A stretch of DNA of 64,000 nucleotides, taken from the NCBI GenBank assembly GCA_010909165.1, contig MU008165.1:372001-436000 (forward strand), read 5' to 3'. How positions within the stretch are numbered: position 1 is the stretch's first letter; every line of letters starts with the position of its first letter. Below, one piece after another: positions 33,789 through 47,999 of this stretch. Below the pieces are notes generated by a model. The model ran no database searches. It worked only from the letters and a program-made list of their open reading frames with translations, and was not told where the DNA came from. The position numbers and the translations under genes were made by a program. Source of the DNA: Anthoceros angustus (lineage: Eukaryota > Plantae > Anthocerotophyta).

Positions 33789-36700
33789 CTAAAAGAGATG
33801 TTGGGTTTCTTGAGGGTGATTAAGTTCACTCAAAATTAGCCTAGACCATACTATATCCTTGGAAATAGATGTTAGTACTCTATATTGATTCAAGACTAGA
33901 CAAGGCAATGGTAGGTGTTTCTTACTCGACCATGATATTGGAGCTCCTCCAAGAAGTAAAACATAACGATACGGATTTTGAGTATCGGGATCACCAGATA
34001 ATCGATCGGCATATGCCGTAAGTGTTAATGTTTTGATTGCTGGTGTATGCTTAAATGTCACCGCTTTGCATAGTCCCTTTAAGGTATCGAAAAATACGCT
34101 TAATCGACATCCGTGTTGATGTCGTGGTTCTCCAAAAGCGTGAGCGAGGCCGACTTCAAAAGAAATATCGGTCTAGTAAAATTGCTTAAATATATGAGAG
34201 TGCCGACATGTCGATATGGGACGGATGCCATCTCCATTTTCTCTTGAGCACTCTTAGGACTCATATCGAGTAAGCGATGCCACTAGCAAAGGTGTGGGTG
34301 CAGCTTTGCATCTTCCATTCCAATTTTGCTAAACTCTCCTTTATATACTTGGTTTGAACTATGCTCACTTTTTATTACTCCTATCGCGGATAATATTTAC
34401 ACCAAGTGCATAATTCATTTCTCCGGTCGGTCATTTCATATAATGTCCAAGCCATGCTTTATCTCATTAGGAGAATAAGAGAGTTTGTTGCCATAAAGAC
34501 GTCATCGACGTATAATAGAAGGTAAATATATCATTTCCTTAAGGTAAATATATAAGCAAGCATCGCCTTTACTTTGCTTAAATCCCTTATTCGAGAGTTG
34601 TATATGGATGGTCAAGTTCCAATTTTTGCCGGATTGCTTGAGTCCATATAGACCCTTGATCAATTTACATACTAAATGCTCCTTGCCTTTTACTTCATAA
34701 CCCTCAGGTTGCTTCATGTATATTTCTTCTTTCAAGCGCCCATACAAATATGCTGTCTTCACATCCATCATATGAAGTTCAAGATCGTACTGGGCACATA
34801 TAGCGAAGATCATGCGAAGAGTGGCAAACTTGGCTACAGGAGCATAAGTGGCCCAAGGTATATAGTCTAGTCCGAGGATTTGGGTAAAACCTCTAGCAAC
34901 TAGGCGTGCTTTATACCTTTCCACGGATCCATCTCCTTTTCTCTTTATCTTAAATACCCATTTGCTGGTTACTATTTTTCTACCCTTAGGAGGTTCAACT
35001 AATTCCCATGTAGAATTACTAATGAGGGAATTATACTCGAATCTACTGACTTCCTTCCATAGATGTTTGGAGGAGAAGAGAAGGCTTGTTTTAGGGTAAG
35101 AGGCTCTTCTAAGTCTCGTGGGCATACTTGATTATAAAGGGACTCGGGAGAATTAGAATCAGGAAAAATAGCAAGGTATCCCAAAGGGGTTCTTTCCAAC
35201 CAGCAGGGCCAGAGATGAGTGGACGTGATCTAAGGTTGTACCTTGGTGCAGGTGTGTCTTCCACAGGAACTGGTTCATCTTCTTGTTCTAAGGGATCCAT
35301 TTCTTCAGTATCATCAGCTTCCAACTGATCATTATCATCTTGAACAGGAGGTATAGCATCTTCTGAAATGGCCTCAAGGGGATCAGATGAAGGTGGAAGA
35401 GGCTCCTCCTCCTCCTGCAGCATGGGGTCAACAGAAGGAACACGAGGAGTAGGGACAAGGAAAGGAAGGGGATTAGGATCATCAAATGTAGAAAAATCAT
35501 TAGCATCATCGGAGTCAACGACTTCAACTCCCACCGTTGGAGAAAAGAGGTAAGACTCATGGAATGTAACACTCGAGCATAAAGAAGTTGTCTTGTTGAA
35601 GGGTTATATAACTTATACCCTTTAATGCCTTGATATCCTATGAAAAGATACTTGGCTGCCTTGGGATCCAACTTCTTACGTAATGCTTTAGGAATGAAGA
35701 CATATGCCGGTGATCCAAAAATACGAAGATGATCAATGGAAGGTTTCTTGCCAATAAACGCTTCATAAGGTGTCATGCCTTGTACTGCTGATGTAGGTAA
35801 GCGATTGATAAGATAGGTTGCTGTAAGAAGGGCCTCAGCCCAATAAACCTTAGGCAACTTGGCCTGTGTTAATAAGCAACCTGTTATCTCTTGTAAACGC
35901 AGATTTTTATTTTCTGCTATCCCATTTTGTTGAGGAGTATAGACAACAGTGAGTTGTTGAGCAATACCTTCTGCTCGACAAAACTCCTGAAAGTGATTAG
36001 ATGTAAATTCACCTCCATTGTCAGAACGTAATGTTTTCAGTTTGCAATCTGTAAGTCTCTCGGCCCATTTCATATAATCTTTGAAAAATTGAAAAGCATC
36101 AGACTTGTTTTGCAAGACATAGGAGGAGACAAAACGGGAAAAATCATCTATAAAAGTCAAAAAATACCTACTTCCACTAAAGGAAGATGTAGATAGAGGT
36201 CCACAGATGTCTGTATGCACTATCTCTAAAGGTTTCTTTGCCCTTTGTGGAGATTTGTTTTTAAAAGGCTCTTGGTGACGCTTGGTGAGGACACAAGTTT
36301 CGCACCAGGATAAATGCCCAACATTTGCAAGACAGGGGTTTCTGTAAAAGTTTCCCTTAGACATCTGGGTGAGTTTTTGACTATTTGGGTGACCAAGGCG
36401 ACAATGCCATAACATTGATGGAGGGGGACTTTGTGGAGAAGAACTGGTGACATAAGCAGATTGTTGACCTCCTACTAGGACAGACAATCTATAAAGGCCA
36501 TCTTCTAAAGTACCACTACAAATAATATGATTGCTATCACCTACATGAGAGAGAAAGCAACTATCTCGTAAAAGGGTCACCGCATGGAATGGGTTTGACA
36601 AATACTTGCAACGATAATAAATTCTTGCACATTAATGGAACATGGAGTACTTGGTGGAGGTGAAGGACTTGTCCGAATCACATGTCAAGACAATGTAACC

Positions 36701-40882: not shown

Positions 40883-42598
40883 ATGCAGTGGTGTGAAATG
40901 GAATCGTCAAGCAATCTAGACGGTGATGAAGTTGGCGGAGAGATGGGTTGTTGCTCATTGGCTTTTGGGTGGAGAAGGAGACGTCAATATGGGCATCCGA
41001 CAAGTGAGAAGGAGACGTCAATATGGGCATCCGACTTGGTCGTCCCTGCAACTGATTCGTCAAGTGCAGTCGGTTTAAAGAGTAAGCAGGAAGACATGCA
41101 GGACGAAGTCGGGGGAATATTAATTGACGAGCAGTGTGAGCAGGAGATGTCAGAGGTCAAGTGCATCTTTTGTGAGCGAATTGTTCGCTCTTCCGGTGCT
41201 GAGAGGCAGAGGCTCAAAGAATTGGAGCCCATGTCGCTCATGGAGCTTAAGCGCAAGCTTTTAATGATCGGCATGGATATTTCCTGGTGTGAGCAAAAGA
41301 GTGACTTTGTGCAGGTTCTAAATCTTGCTTCGGCTGTTTGCTCGGAATCGGAGTGTAGGGAGCTGTTGAAGCTGACATGTTCGCAGACTTTGGGATGTGG
41401 GCATCGCTGTCGAGGAGTTCGAGCAGAACGTACTTGCCTCCCCTGTCTAGAGGTGATATCGATTGTGCTAACCCAAATGACACTTCTTGACCCATTTTTC
41501 CTCAAGCCACGATAGTGAAAATGCAATGGTATGGCGGAGAACTGATCTGACACCCTTTCCTCCTTCTCATAGGATGGCTGTCACTCAAATCCATGTGCTG
41601 CTCAGAAGGTCTTCACGTCTCGGGACGAGCTCTGTGCGATATGTATGCTGGATCCTGTTAGGCAAGCACCTGCCATACTGCTGACCTGCGGGCATATCGT
41701 GCACTTCCATTGTGCAAAGCTGAAGATTAAATCGGGATTTCCAGGCCCCGAAATCAGCTTTGGTTTCCTCGACTGTCCAATCTGTTTGCAGGTCATGAAT
41801 CATCCCACTTTGGAGTCTTTTGTAAGGGGACACGACATGCTGAGAGGGCGGGTAAGACATGAATGGTAACAAAGAGGATGCATGACACGTTCTTGGGGAA
41901 GCAATACTCGTTCATATCATGCAAAGAGATCTCAGTTTGAAACATTCGACTGTTCAGGTTAGGCAAATGGTAAAAGAGCAGCTGAAGACGGAACACATCA
42001 TGCAAGGAAAGCAACAAAAGCAGCTTGAGATGGAAAAGGAAGATGAGGGCCTCGGGGTAGAAATAACCGAGGAAATGGTGATTGCTGCCATGAAGAGGTA
42101 TCAATATCATGTGTGCTTTCAGTGCACGAAGCCATATTTTGGTGGTATTCGAAACTGCAGAGCGGAAAACGAAGGGTAGGTACTTTCAACATCTCTTGTT
42201 CGATTAAGATCTTCTGGAGTCGCTTGCGAGCTTGTACTAATCATGCTTGATTATGCAGGGAAGCCGACCATGATCCGCGCGAGCTTATGTGTGGCCACTG
42301 CGTTGCTGCAGCAGCTGGCCACGGACGATGTGGGGTAAAAGGCCATGGCACTGATTACATAGAATACAAGTGCAGATATTGCTGTTCCGTAGCTACCCGT
42401 TTTTGCCTTGGATCTGTTCATTATTGTGGCGCTTGTCACCTTCTTAGAGAAAGATGTGTGGATCCCAAGAAATTTATGCGGACCTGTCCAGGCCCTGATT
42501 CTTGCCCTCTGGGCTTGGCCCATGCCCCAAATGGCGAAGAGGCATGCCTTGGTTGTTCTCTCTGTCGTATACAACGACAAGAACAGATGTCACCGTAA
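40883..42598 (+). CDS. MYCBP2/PHR C-terminus-like RING-Cys-relay E3 ubiquitin ligase, short paralog (SAP-like, ZnF, RING-H2, tandem-Cys domain)
   Basis: Exons ~40883-41452, 41573-41851, 41958-42175 and 42259-42598, all GT-AG and frame-preserving. Motifs CSQTLGCGHRCRGVRAERTCLPCL, ELCAICMLDPVRQAPAILLTCGHIVHFHC...GPEISFGFLDCPIC, RYQYHVCFQCTKPYFGGIRNC, DPRELMCGHC, HGTDYIEYKCRYCCSVATRFC and CPLGLAHAPNGEEACLGCSLCR. Start codon uncertain. Confidence 0.9.
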
Positions 42599-43540: not shown

Positions 43541-44201
43541 AGATAGCTTGGCGGCTGATTTCCGCTTCTTACAGGAAGTGTCCGGAAACACCCTTCATAT
43601 CTCCAAGAGGATTTTTATAGACCGAGTTGTCTTAGCCACTGTTTCGGTCCTATCCAAGGCCACTAACAATGGCACTTGTAGCCTGCAAGAGCGACAATGT
43701 GAAACAGGCACCGTCGCGATACAGTACCAGTCTCTCTAGCGTGTTGAAGTGGATTCCATTTTCGCTGATTGCATGCAATAGTTTCTGGAGGATTAATCAC
43801 TTGTGTCCTCCCTTGTCCCAACTGCAATCCCTCACTTCAGTGTCCTCCCTTGTCCCAACTGCAGTCCCTCAAGCTCCTCGGGAAGGCCGACAATGTATGA
43901 TAGCGGCATATAGGGCTTCCAAGCTGGAGCCGAATCCGTGGATTGCAGTGGAGGTTAGCTGTGTTTGGTCACCTGTTTGCGAATTCCATCTCAAAGCCGG
44001 GAGGTAACGAGAATTCGAGCAGGCAAACATCAGGAACAGCCCGAAACAGTAGGCGAGCTGGATTGGGAAACTTCCCGTTTATGGACATGTTATCGGGAAA
44101 CCTAGCCTAGGTGGAGTATGGGCCGGTGCATCTTCCTGGACGGGAGAGGTCAAAGGGAACTCGTTCTATATTGAGCATGCTCTTTTGTGTTGTGAAGTCT
44201 C

Positions 44202-46929
44202 ATGGACTGGCTTCACCTTCAAGGTGAAGCTGTGGTTCAACAATTGCAGCATCCGAGTGAGGTTTACAAGAAGAGGGCACGATTGCAGCTAACCTTTGTG
44301 CGGGGTGAGTACGAGGATGAGGATGGAGACACTGCCACCGGGTTCTTGTTAGCTGATGTCCCTCCCAGGGCCGGGGGTACGAGATTTGGCTGTTGTTCCC
44401 CTAACACAGATAGAGTGTTTTCACATGCAGCAGGGCTAGGTGAAGTGGATGCTTCTGCTGGGTGTGAGATGGGATCGTTCTGCAGTCGGGATGTTGGGGA
44501 ATCCACCGCACACAGCTCTCGCTCCGCCTTTCGCATCCCGTCTTCTAGCAGGAAAGATTTACGTTTGCATCCGGACAGAGGGGATTCATCATCTGCAGCT
44601 AATTCGACAGTCGCAGTGGACTTGAATCGTAAGCGGCATCACGGGCAGCACGAAGTGGGGGACATACCTTTACATGATGAAGAGCTTCCGCAGGACGAAG
44701 CGGGGAACATACCTTTGCATGATGGAGAGCTTCCGGAATCATCTCTACATGATGAAGAGCTTCCGGAATTTGTCGCTGTGCAGGATGATGAGCTGCATGC
44801 AGTCCACTATATATCGGATGAGGAGATGACGGATGCGCAGTTTACATGCGATCATTGTTGCCAGAGTTTGTCGATGGCTTTGATTGGCGCCACGCTCAGC
44901 TGTACGTGTCTCTTCTGTGTTCCTTGTTTACGGCAACATATTGATGCTACTCTGGAAAGAGCCTTCGTAAGTTGCTCCAACCAATCATCAGATGTGAAGG
45001 TTACATCCGAACCTAGCACGTCTGCAGCTACATCTTCTGGTGCCAATGGGCAACATGCAGAAGCGTCCTCCAGCTCTGCTGCCTTCGAATGGATAACATG
45101 CCCCACTCCTAGTTGTGGTGGTAGTTTGAACCTGTTAGATGCACAGAGTGTGGCCCCTGAATCTTTCAGGAAATGGGAGGACAAGGCCAGTAGCGAATTT
45201 CTGGACCAGAGTACCTCTTTTGTACACTGTCCAGGGTGTGGAATCCTTATAGAGAAGGTTGCTGGCGAATTGCCTCAAAATGGGGCTCCAGAGAACGGTG
45301 GGATCCGCCTTTCTAAAGCTGCTTTGCGTCACAAGGCTGTAAATCGGTTTCGTTGTCCTATGTGCACAGTTGATTTTTGTGGCAAATGTATAAGAAAGCC
45401 CTATCACGAGGGGAAGACCTGTGAGCAGTATGAGGAGGAGATATCAGCTGTAAAGTGCATCTTTTGTGAGGGAATTGTTCGTTCTTCTAGTTCTGAGAGT
45501 CGGAGACTCAAAAAATTGGAGTCCATGTCTGTTAAACAGCTCAGGGACGAGCTTGAAAGGAGTGACGTGGATATTGCCTGGTGTGTGGAAAAGGGAGAAC
45601 TAGTGAAGGTGCAGAATCTTGCTTCTGCTGTTTGCTTGGGAAAGGACTGTAGGAAGCTGCTGAAGCTTTCATGTTCTCGGATTTTGGAATGTGGGCATCG
45701 CTGTGGAGGAGTTCGAGCAGAACGTACTTGCCTTCCCTGTCTAGAGGTGATTGTGCGGACCCAACTCTCGGGTACAGAAGTTGGGTCCCAATTTCTGTAC
45801 CCGACTTCTGTACACTCTTTTTCTTTGTCGTAGTGAGAATGCTTTGGCATGTCTGACAACTGATAGGACACCCTTTTCCTACTTTCCACAGGATGGCTGT
45901 CACTCAAATCCAGGTGCTGGTCAGAAGATCTTGACATCCGGGGACGAGCTGTGTGCTGTATGTATGGTGGATCCCATTAGACAAGCACCTGCCATACTGC
46001 TGACCTGTGGGCATGTGGTGCACTCGCAGTGTGCAAAGAGGAAGATTGATGAGGGGTTTCCAGGCCCCGAAATCAGCTTCGGTTTTCTTGAGTGTGCACA
46101 ATGTTCACAGGTCATGGAACATCCAACTTTGGGGCCTCACGCGTGGAAGCATGAGAAGCTGAGATTGCTGGTGGGAATTGTTATCCCGGATGTTCACATT
46201 CTCGGTGAAGCAATACCTGTTCACATCATGCAAAGAGATCCTCAGCTTGAGACATTTGGCTGTGCAGGTTAGGCAAAGGGTAGGCGAGAGGCTCAAGATT
46301 GAGCGAATGGAAGAAGAGCGGCGCAAGATGGGGGCTTCATCAAAGCCTTCAAAGTGGAAGGTAGACCAGTTGAGGGCAGACAAGGCAAACGTAGAAGTAA
46401 CCGAGGAGTCGGTCAGTGATGCCATGAAGAAGTACCAGTATTACGTCTGCTGTAAGTGTAAGGAACCATATTTTGGTGGTATGCGCGACTGTAGAGCGAG
46501 AAATGAACGGTACGTGACGGGCAAAACACATCATTCTCTCTTGATAATTTCAAGATTTTCTGGTCTCGTTGGCAAGTCTATACTAATGATGCTTGATTGT
46601 GCAGGGAAGACGGTTATAATCCGGGCGAGCTTATGTGTGGCGGCTGTTCTGCAGCCCTTGTTGGTAAGGGAAAATGTAAGGTAGCAAACCATGGCACTGA
46701 TTACATGGAGTACAAGTGCAAGTATTGCTGCTCCGTGGCCACTTTCTTTTGCTATGGAACCACCCACTTTTGCACCTCTTGTCATCGTACGAGAGAAAGA
46801 GGTATCGATCTGAAGCAGGGCATTGTTAAATGTAAAGGCCCTCAGCACTGCCCTTTACGGATCGAGCATGCCCCAAATGGCGAAGAGTCATGCCTTGGCT
46901 GCTCTCTCTGTCGTATCCAAGGGCAATAA
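44202..46929 (+). CDS. RING1-IBR-SAP-like-ZnF-RING-H2-tandem-Cys protein (RBR/RCR hybrid E3 candidate), about 796 aa
   Basis: Exons 44202-45746, 45892-46170, 46268-46509 and 46605-46929. RING1-like CDHC..SCTCLFCVPC..CPTPSC. IBR CPGC..CPMCTVDFCGKC..PYHEGKTC. MYCBP2-like CGHRCGGVRAERTCLPCL, GPEISFGFLECAQC, YQYYVCCKCKEPYFGGMRDC, ELMCGGC, HGTDYMEYKCKYCCSVATFFCYGTTHFCTSCH and CPLRIEHAPNGEESCLGCSLCR. Start codon uncertain. Confidence 0.92.
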
Positions 46930-47999
46930 GGATGGCACTTGGGAGAAACAATGCTCTGTTGTTGAAGACCCTCAACTATTTCAAGTGCATGGTTATCGTA
47001 ATGCTTGTTGCAGCTGTCATCCTGTTACCATCCAGCCTGGCCACAGAACTTGCCGACAAAGCCACTTTGAAGTGGTTCATTATGGTGCCCGTTATTCACC
47101 AACGAGCAGTATGCCTGCCTCTCACTCGCAATTGAATGTTGCTTTCTGCAGACCGGACAGCAAAGCACCCAGGTCTCCATCCCTCCTAAAGCTGCCCACT
47201 TCCCTATCTGCGCATCAAGATCCTCCCATCCAATGGCCTACCTGGCCTTGACAAGGCGTCTCCGACCGGACAGCAACGCACGGTTTCACACGATCAGGGT
47301 CAGGGGTGGGAGCCCCGAATCCGGTCAGTCGTGCCGTTCATTCATGTATTGTTCAACTTCTACGGCTTATTCATACCCATTTTACGCGGAAGCTGCAAGA
47401 CAACGGAAGACAGATTCTTATAATTTTCTGCAGGCTGAAAAATAATGCACCATACAACATTCAACGGTAGGCTGTCTCCCTTATCATTTTTCACTCTCTA
47501 GTTGGATGCGAGACTTTATAGACTTTATAGGGGAGTCCCATAATTTTTCACTGTCTAGTACTCATCATGTATTTTTCATATCAACTCGGCCATCTTAATA
47601 CCTACTTATTGTATAAATTAGTGGAAGCTTATGGCCATCTTAATACCTACTTATTGTATAAATTAGTCGAAGCTTATCTCGTTCATCCTATTCGTAATAG
47701 GATATAGGGGGTTATAGGGTAGATTAGTGCAGGGGCACGCCCCTGCGCCTGGTGCCCCGTCGTGGGTTGTCCCCTTTTGCCTCGGGGTAGATGGGATTTC
47801 CCATCTGGTTCTTTAATAAAGTCTCCACATTCCCTATTTTGTAATTGGTTTTAAACTTATTAATTTTTACTCATTTTTCCTATAAATAGATCAACTATTT
47901 AATTGAAATCATACAATATATAGCTGAATTAAGCATTTGGTTTGACCACCCTATCGAACACATCCATTACCTCCTCTATCTTACCTCCACATGCATAAT

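What the first reader, a model, noticed from the sequence alone, without database searches (positions are those of the whole stretch)
44847..45430. RBR-type RING1-IBR fused upstream of the RCR module: candidate hybrid ligase in which RCR replaces RING2
Seen: CDHC-x14-CTC-x2-C-x2-C...CPTPSC (RING1-like, with the usual His replaced by Cys and a Ser/Ala-rich insert), followed by a canonical IBR (CPGC..CPMC-x4-CGKC-x5-H-x4-C). No RING2/Rcat follows; instead a SAP-like domain and the RCR cassette do. Known: RBR ligases use RING1 to bind E2~Ub, IBR as an allosteric Ub-binding site and the Rcat Cys as catalytic site. Inference: two E2-binding RINGs may feed one Cys relay, or RING1-IBR may regulate it. 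This architecture is not one of the standard named E3 classes.
Basis: partly seen in the sequence, partly recalled or inferred. Interest (0 to 1): 0.88.

Follow-up and report, generated by a model that had tools for sequence, protein, structure and literature searches.

The report
RBR-type RING1-IBR fused to RCR ligase
This transcribed plant gene joins the front half of one ubiquitin-ligase class (RING1-IBR of RBR ligases) to the catalytic module of another (the MYCBP2-type RING-Cys-relay); the combination is real, belongs to a large eukaryotic family, and no held paper found here describes it.

Summary
Window 44847-45430 encodes an eight-ligand RING1 and an IBR, inside exon 1 of a spliced four-exon gene (44202-46929, 796 aa).

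Evidence that this is an RBR-type RING1-IBR:
- Pfam IBR scores above its curated cut-off.
- A family profile matches HOIP/RNF31 and RNF144A best.
- In an AlphaFold model, residues 2-207 superpose on RING1-IBR of RNF216, HOIL-1, ARIH2, parkin and HOIP.

No RING2 follows. Next come a conserved CxxC, a SAP-like insert, a zinc module with no solved relative, and then an intact MYCBP2-like RING plus tandem-cysteine domain.

The gene is not a one-off. An exhaustive search gave 562 cluster representatives at E<=1e-10, and 88 of those examined carry the full architecture. Named members come from mosses, lycophytes, ferns, green algae, Telonema and Dictyostelium. No seed plant was named.

RING1 keeps its zinc ligands, but its E2-contact residue is hydrophobic in 44 of 88 members, against 82 of 84 for the RCR RING. 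I therefore read the RCR RING as the main E2 dock and RING1-IBR as a regulatory or ubiquitin-binding arm (inferred).

The link to flagellate lineages fails on Closterium and Dictyostelium. The scan had already noted the RCR part of this gene on this same window.

The parts
44202..46929 (+). Whole coding region. Exons: 44202-45746, 45892-46170, 46268-46509, 46605-46929 (stop TAA). 796 aa.
   Evidence: Transcript contig of run X1 (3601 nt, no mismatches) with three GT..AG introns removed. Translation. The N-terminus matches homologues that also start MD....
44298..44357 (+). N-terminal acidic motif (aa 33-52, GEYEDEDGDTATGF..AD), conserved in land-plant members.
   Evidence: Alignment A1. Function unknown.
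44847..45116 (+). RBR-type RING1 (aa 216-305). Ligands C216, C219, C234, C236, C239, C242, C300, C305. C4C4 variant.
   Evidence: Profile hits to HOIP and RNF144A RING1. Superposition on 1wim with Z 9.5 and on 7v8f with Z 7.1. Ligand conservation.
44940..45086 (+). Ser/Ala-rich insert inside RING1 (aa 247-295), predicted disordered.
   Evidence: pLDDT below 50 for model residues 51-84. Variable in length and sequence among homologues. dN/dS about 0.5.
45132..45209 (+). RING1-IBR linker helices (aa 311-336).
   Evidence: Helices 102-108 and 110-127 of the model. The motif LAPExFxxWExAA is conserved in streptophytes.
45213..45428 (+). IBR domain (aa 338-409). Ligands C343, C346, C385, C388, C393, C396, H402, C407. 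It has a long family-specific loop that is shortened in this species.
   Evidence: Pfam PF01485 above its cut-off. Superposes on the RNF216 IBR (7m4m, rmsd 1.8 Å, Z 5.5) and the HOIP IBR (2ct7, rmsd 2.2 Å, Z 5.7). dN/dS about 0.07.
45456..45467 (+). Invariant CxxC (C419, C422) directly after the IBR.
   Evidence: 88 of 88 conserved. Also retained in the tandem paralogue that lacks RING1-IBR.
45513..45608 (+). SAP-like helical insert (aa 438-469), seen in the streptophyte members aligned and absent from the protist members aligned.
   Evidence: Pfam SAP_RNF34_RFFL at E=0.0085, 16.2 bits, below the 27-bit cut-off. Helices in the model. Absent from the protist rows of A3 and from the short protist segments.
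45633..45900 (+). Pre-RING zinc module (C478, C483, C491, C497, H499, C501, C510, C513, C518). It is split by intron 1: 45633-45746 and 45892-45900.
   Evidence: Ligands are invariant or C/H only in 88 members. No PDB, Pfam or fold relative. The second half is also present in the RCR-only animal protein P0190.
45952..46104 (+). RCR RING domain (aa 536-586).
   Evidence: Sub-threshold Pfam RING hits (best zf-RING_5 E=5.5e-6, 26.7 vs 27.9 bits). Aligned to the MYCBP2 RING in 5o6c. C-x-[IVL]-C in 82 of 84 members.
46421..46926 (+). Tandem-cysteine (TC) domain, interrupted by intron 3 (46510-46604). Upstream relay Cys C683 at 46490-46492. CC pair C730-C731 at 46726-46731.
   Evidence: Family profile against MYCBP2 5o6c: E=9.2e-86. 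C683 conserved in 87 of 88 and C731 in 81 of 81 non-gap sequences.

Best explanation
The gene encodes a single-chain ubiquitin E3 of a conserved RBR/RCR hybrid family. Its order is an N-terminal acidic motif, an RBR-type RING1, an IBR, a CxxC, a SAP-like insert, a pre-RING zinc module, an RCR RING and a tandem-cysteine domain.

Shown: the domain identities, the absence of a RING2, the intact relay cysteines, transcription with the segment retained, and conservation of the architecture across distant eukaryotes.

[quoted passage not shown] Its own RING docks E2~Ub. Ubiquitin then passes to the mediator-loop Cys (C683), on to the downstream Cys of the CC pair (C730/C731), and finally to substrate, as established for MYCBP2. 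The RING1-IBR is an inherited RBR half that no longer needs to deliver ubiquitin to a RING2. It most likely acts as a regulatory arm, binding ubiquitin, a ubiquitin-like protein or a charged E2 to position or gate the relay. This would resemble the allosteric ubiquitin site at the RING1-IBR junction of HOIP, HOIL-1, RNF216 and parkin. I do not read it as an equal second E2 entry point.
For: RBR identity of RING1-IBR:
- Pfam IBR above its cut-off.
- Profile A3 matches the HOIP RBR at E=1.1e-5, with RING1 and IBR collinear, and RNF144A RING1 at E=2.7e-4.
- The 50 Foldseek PDB matches listed are all RBR ligases, best E=2.1e-5.
- Model residues 2-207 align to RING1-IBR of RNF216, HOIL-1, ARIH2, parkin and HOIP with Z 6-8.5.

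RCR identity: family profile against MYCBP2 5o6c, E=9.2e-86. Both relay Cys are conserved.

No RING2.

Which RING docks E2: the contact position C-x-Phi-C is I/V/L in 82 of 84 RCR RINGs but L/I/V in only 44 of 88 RING1s. The loop-2 Pro is present in 72 of 88 against 24 of 88. The window has His218, and its close relatives have Tyr218 and Ser241.

RING1-IBR is still constrained. Its zinc ligands are 85-100% conserved across the family. Against 90-95% identical relatives, dN/dS is about 0.07 for the IBR and 0.46 for RING1.

The segment is retained in spliced transcripts of four organisms.
Against: There is no biochemical evidence for any member. Half of the family does keep a hydrophobic E2-contact residue in RING1, so E2 binding may be real in some lineages. 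The dN/dS values rest on 40 listed differences. The comparison sequences could be paralogues or homeologues rather than orthologues. No model of the full-length protein was made, so contacts between RING1-IBR and the RCR module were not examined. The IBR loop that is conserved elsewhere is shortened here, which could mean a partial loss of function in this lineage.
Confidence: 0.5

Rival explanations
1. One reading: RING1 is a true second E2~Ub docking site. Two RINGs, perhaps with different E2 preferences, would then feed the same cysteine relay.
For: RING1 has the RBR RING1 fold and all eight ligands. 44 of 88 members keep L/I/V at the E2-contact position, including most of the moss, lycophyte and fern sequences aligned.
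Against: The contact residue is His in the window and Tyr in close relatives, and the loop-2 Pro is Ser in those relatives. Conservation of E2-contact features is far weaker than in the RCR RING. RING1 shows the weaker purifying selection of the two domains.
Confidence: 0.25
2. RING1-IBR is a substrate- or partner-recruiting module, for example for a ubiquitylated or UBL-modified target or for oligomerisation. It would have no allosteric effect on catalysis.
For: The family adds different targeting domains upstream: C2 in the Dictyostelium purpureum member and related sequences, and an acidic motif in land plants. This suggests a modular recruitment region. The IBR carries a long conserved family-specific loop.
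Against: RING1-IBR is constant while the other N-terminal domains vary. That fits a core mechanistic role better than a targeting role.
Confidence: 0.15
3. In this species RING1-IBR is a decaying relic with no function.
For: There are many amino-acid changes in RING1 against close relatives. The IBR loop carries a deletion. A tandem copy exists without RING1-IBR yet with all later Cys intact.
Against: All 16 zinc ligands are intact. IBR dN/dS is about 0.07. The segment is kept in transcripts of four organisms. The RING1-IBR-less copy was not found in the one RNA run of this organism.
Confidence: 0.08

Closest known systems
MYCBP2 / PHR1 / Highwire / RPM-1 (RING-Cys-relay E3; PDB 5o6c, 6t7f)
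   Same: RING, linker helices and TC domain align end to end (E=9.2e-86). Both relay cysteines and the zinc ligands are conserved.
   Different: By my own knowledge MYCBP2 is a protein of about 4,600 residues with RCC1-like, PHR and FBXO45-binding regions and no RING1-IBR; only its RCR fragment was examined here. This protein has 796 residues, with an RBR-type RING1-IBR directly upstream.
RBR ligases, especially HOIP/RNF31 and RNF144A; also RNF216, HOIL-1, ARIH1/2 and parkin
   Same: RING1 fold, RING1-IBR linker helices and IBR. HOIP and RNF144A RING1 also have Cys instead of His at ligand 4.
   Different: There is no RING2/Rcat and so no RBR catalytic cysteine. RING1 has a disordered insert of about 50 residues. 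The IBR has a long extra loop.
Uncharacterised 'RCR-type E3 ubiquitin transferase' / 'MYCBP2-like' proteins of protists and seedless plants, e.g. UniProt Q55BN2, F0ZCM3 and D2UXL3, Dictyostelium discoideum DDB_G0284853, Ceratodon KC19_2G009400 and Selaginella LOC9631788
   Same: Same family and the same domain order.
   Different: Dictyostelium-type members add a C2 domain. The aligned protist members lack the SAP-like insert, and most members outside the streptophytes have His at RING1 ligand 4. I found no functional study. PMC6743453 only names the Dictyostelium protein 'mycBP2/Highwire-like'.
RNF34/RFFL SAP domain
   Same: Weak sequence match to aa 438-469.
   Different: Below the Pfam cut-off (16.2 against 27 bits). 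Here it is an insert within a zinc module, not a free-standing domain.

Membership tests
RBR (RING-between-RING) E3 ligases | RING1 with eight cross-braced zinc ligands | tested here: met
   The ligand pattern is present and conserved. Profile and fold matches go to RBR RING1. Zinc binding itself was not measured.
RBR (RING-between-RING) E3 ligases | IBR domain after RING1 | tested here: met
   Pfam PF01485 at 32.1 bits, above the 24.3-bit cut-off. Superposes on the RNF216 and HOIP IBR domains.
RBR (RING-between-RING) E3 ligases | RING2/Rcat with a catalytic cysteine after the IBR | tested here: not met
   There is no second IBR or RING2 Pfam hit. The profile of the post-IBR segment finds no PDB chain and no Pfam family. 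Its model has no RBR match: Foldseek best E=0.96 and best Z=2.4. It is therefore not an RBR in the strict sense.
RCR (RING-Cys-relay) E3 ligases | RING followed by a tandem-cysteine domain homologous to MYCBP2 | tested here: met
   E=9.2e-86 to 5o6c over the whole module.
RCR (RING-Cys-relay) E3 ligases | Two relay cysteines at the aligned positions | tested here: met
   C683 and the C730/C731 pair are present. They are conserved in 87 of 88 and 81 of 81 members.
RCR (RING-Cys-relay) E3 ligases | Ub relay between the cysteines and esterification of Thr/Ser | not testable with these tools
   This needs biochemistry.
RBR/RCR hybrid family (uncharacterised) | RING1 + IBR + CxxC/pre-RING zinc module + RCR RING + TC in one chain | tested here: met
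   All five HMM-defined parts are present in the window protein and in 88 cluster representatives.
RNF34/RFFL-type SAP domain | Match to PF23632 above its cut-off | tested here: inconclusive
   E=0.0085 and 16.2 bits against a 27-bit cut-off.

The most novel reading that the evidence does not exclude
The RBR/RCR hybrid is the ancestral setting of the RING-Cys-relay. In an early eukaryote the RCR cassette took the place of RING2 behind an RBR RING1-IBR. The animal giant MYCBP2 and other RCR-only proteins would then be derived by loss of RING1-IBR. In the surviving hybrids, RING1-IBR would put a threonine/serine-esterifying ligase under ubiquitin-dependent allosteric control. This would be a regulatory logic not known for any E3.
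Probability: 0.2. Interest if true: 0.8.

Novelty: new variant of a known kind. Interest (0 to 1): 0.6.

Why it matters
The papers I could read present the RING-Cys-relay mechanism through one protein, the very large animal MYCBP2 (e.g. PMC9120709). This gene belongs to a broad family of small (about 600-800 aa) RCR enzymes in seedless plants, green algae, amoebae and other protists. These proteins carry the front half of an RBR ligase.

If they are active, three things follow:
- They would be tractable models for studying the cysteine relay and non-lysine ubiquitylation.
- They would form a structural bridge between the RBR and RCR classes.
- They would offer a plant and protist entry point into ester-linked ubiquitylation, with knock-outs feasible in a moss or in Dictyostelium.

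No seed plant was named among the hits. If that absence is confirmed, it is a notable lineage loss.

Tried and rejected
(1) RING2 vestige. The spacing C-x2-C-x17-C-x4-C in protist members recalls, from memory, the first zinc site of an Rcat. However, the profile of 76 such segments finds no PDB chain and no Pfam family. The separate model (pLDDT 84.8) has no RBR match: Foldseek best E=0.96 and best Z=2.4. AlphaFold DB returns only family members and a weak NFX1-type hit at E=0.17. The idea is not supported.

(2) Flagellate-lineage distribution. Rejected as a rule, because Closterium and Dictyostelium purpureum carry the architecture.

(3) 'Clean in-frame loss' of RING1-IBR in the upstream paralogue. 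blastn shows that homology simply starts at 41129, matching 45423, the base right after the last IBR Cys codon. It is a 5'-truncated duplicate, not an internal deletion.

(4) The ESM Atlas feature search gave only sub-0.9 leads.

(5) The 2018 paper that defined RCR is not held by DOI, so its statements on distribution could not be checked.

(6) The species was not identified. Run and organism names are coded, and the window's own protein is not in the protein collection.

(7) Expression in antheridia or sperm could not be tested, because no run metadata are available.

Full report
**The gene.** The finding lies in a long open reading frame starting at 44202. A transcript contig from run X1 is 3601 nt long and identical to the window. 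It covers 43900-47300 with three GT..AG introns removed. This fixes the exons at 44202-45746, 45892-46170, 46268-46509 and 46605-46929. The product is 796 aa. Spliced contigs from three related organisms (90-95% identical) run without interruption from 44743 through exon 1 into exons 2-4.

**The observation.**
- RING1 ligands: C216, C219, C234, C236, C239, C242, C300 and C305.
- IBR ligands: C343, C346, C385, C388, C393, C396, H402 and C407.

Pfam IBR scores 32.1 bits against a 24.3-bit cut-off.

**Is it an RBR-type RING1-IBR?** Four independent lines say yes.
1. A 14-sequence profile of the N-terminal module hits the HOIP/RNF31 RBR best (E=1.1e-5), with RING1 and IBR matched in order. The next hit is RNF144A RING1. 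Both of these RING1s also have Cys instead of His at ligand 4, so that 'replacement' is a known RBR variant.
2. An AlphaFold model of aa 210-515 has mean pLDDT 78.9. Only the Ser/Ala-rich insert is disordered.
3. The 50 Foldseek PDB matches listed for this model are all RBR ligases, best E=2.1e-5.
4. Structural alignment places model residues 2-207 on RING1-IBR of RNF216, HOIL-1, ARIH2, parkin, HOIP and HHARI with Z 5.8-8.5. RING1 alone aligns to RNF144A with Z 9.5.

**What follows the IBR.** No RING2 is detectable.
- Pfam finds no second IBR or RING2.
- A 76-sequence profile of the post-IBR segment finds no PDB chain and no Pfam family.
- A separate model of this segment (pLDDT 84.8) has no significant fold match: Foldseek best E=0.96 and best Z=2.4.

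Instead there is a zinc module whose ligands are invariant, or Cys/His only, in 88 members: C419, C422, C478, C483, C491, C497, H499, C501, C510 and C513, plus C518 as read from the sequence. In the streptophyte members aligned it is interrupted by a helical SAP-like insert. That insert matches RNF34/RFFL SAP only below the Pfam cut-off.

The second half of the module also occurs in an animal protein with macro and RCR domains and no RING1-IBR (P0190). I therefore treat that half as part of an extended RCR cassette.

The RCR itself aligns to MYCBP2 at E=9.2e-86. C683 and the C730/C731 pair are conserved.

**Family and distribution.** An exhaustive profile search with the N-terminal module found 1249 cluster representatives at E<=1e-3, 562 at E<=1e-10 and 110 at E<=1e-30. 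Among the 161 proteins I examined in detail, 89 including the window protein have RING1, IBR, zinc module, RCR RING and TC domain in one chain. Most of the others are fragments.

Named members:
- Mosses: Ceratodon, Sphagnum.
- Lycophytes: Selaginella, Diphasiastrum.
- Ferns: Pteridium, Psilotum, Ceratopteris, Adiantum.
- Streptophyte algae: Closterium, Mesostigma, Chlorokybus.
- Chlorophytes: Cymbomonas, Myrmecia.
- Other eukaryotes: Telonema, Dictyostelium purpureum.

A search with a fern protein returned lycophyte relatives at 42-44% identity but no seed-plant protein. This suggests loss in seed plants but does not prove it.

AlphaFold DB matches to the N-terminal model are first UniProt entries named 'RCR-type E3 ubiquitin transferase' or 'MYC binding protein 2, putative'. 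Entries named 'RBR-type E3 ubiquitin transferase' come next. That order shows the hybrid nature of the module, and it shows that the family already carries automatic database labels.

Variants exist. Dictyostelium-type proteins have C2 upstream, and one protein has SPRY in place of the RCR.

**Literature.** Seven full-text searches found no paper describing an RBR RING1-IBR joined to an RCR module. One review presents MYCBP2 as conserved from C. elegans to mammals and mentions no non-animal RCR. One Dictyostelium paper merely names DDB_G0284853 'a mycBP2/Highwire-like protein'.

**Mechanism.** The zinc scaffolds of both RING1 and IBR are conserved across the family. The hallmarks of E2 contact are not shared equally between the two RINGs:

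| Feature | RCR RING | RING1 |
|---|---|---|
| C-x-Phi-C position is I/V/L | 82 of 84 | 44 of 88 |
| Loop-2 Pro present | 72 of 88 | 24 of 88 |

In the window the RING1 contact residue is His218. In relatives B-D it is Tyr, and the loop-2 Pro is Ser.

A Nei-Gojobori estimate from the 40 listed differences gives dN/dS of about 0.07 for the IBR, 0.46 for RING1 and 0.53 for the insert. Counts are small, and the list of differences may be incomplete.

I therefore commit to this reading: the RCR RING is the main E2~Ub dock, the two cysteines relay ubiquitin as in MYCBP2, and RING1-IBR is a constrained regulatory or ubiquitin-binding arm. That last step is inference by analogy with the allosteric ubiquitin site of RBR ligases, which I state from established knowledge and did not test here.

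**Context.** A tandem copy at 41129-42593 matches 45423-46938 at 72% nucleotide identity. It begins exactly after the last IBR cysteine codon. It keeps the CxxC, the SAP-like insert, the zinc module and the RCR cysteines. It was not found in the one RNA run of this organism. This shows that the unit from the CxxC onward can persist without RING1-IBR. It also places the CxxC with the RCR side rather than with the IBR.

**Verdict.** This gene is a member of a widespread, database-labelled family for which I found no published study. The family combines halves of two E3 classes.

Noticed in passing
window 41129-42593 (+): A tandem 5'-truncated duplicate of the gene, matching 45423-46938 at 72% nucleotide identity. 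It starts right after the last IBR Cys codon. The CxxC, SAP-like insert, zinc module, RING and TC cysteines are all intact in its ORFs. It was not found in the one RNA run of this organism.
   Followed up: partly
window 44298-44357 (+): An N-terminal acidic motif (GE.EDEDGD.AT.F..AD) is conserved in the moss, lycophyte and fern members aligned and absent from the protist members aligned. It could be a docking motif. Its function is unknown.
   Followed up: no
window about 45270-45300 (+), aa 357-366: The family-specific IBR loop (consensus LPxGVAxSGVPExDRTxPFxELDxxGxPLS) is about 11 residues shorter in this species. The 90-95% identical relatives show no indel here, so they share the deletion.
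   Followed up: partly
window 45456-45900 (+), plus alignment A4: A zinc-binding module of about 11 invariant ligands lies between the IBR and the RCR RING. It has no Pfam family and no solved-structure relative. There is a weak NFX1-type resemblance (E=0.17). Its second half is also present in an animal macro-RCR protein (P0190).
   Followed up: partly
window 35288-36601 (-): A long ORF with the look of a Ty1/copia-type integrase (retrotransposon) lies upstream of the tandem pair. I judged this by eye from the translation and ran no search.
   Followed up: no
proteins P0191, P0173, P0106, P0190 (not in the window): The family has architectural variants: C2-RING1-IBR-RCR (Dictyostelium purpureum and relatives), RING1-IBR-zinc module-SPRY without an RCR, and macro-RCR without RING1-IBR (the mollusc Dreissena).
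   Followed up: partly
protein P0181 (not in the window): A protein with the full hybrid architecture is filed in UniRef under the amphipod Hirondellea gigas as 'RanBP-type and C3HC4-type zinc finger-containing protein 1'. It could be a real animal member or contamination. The name reflects its RBR-like front half.
   Followed up: no
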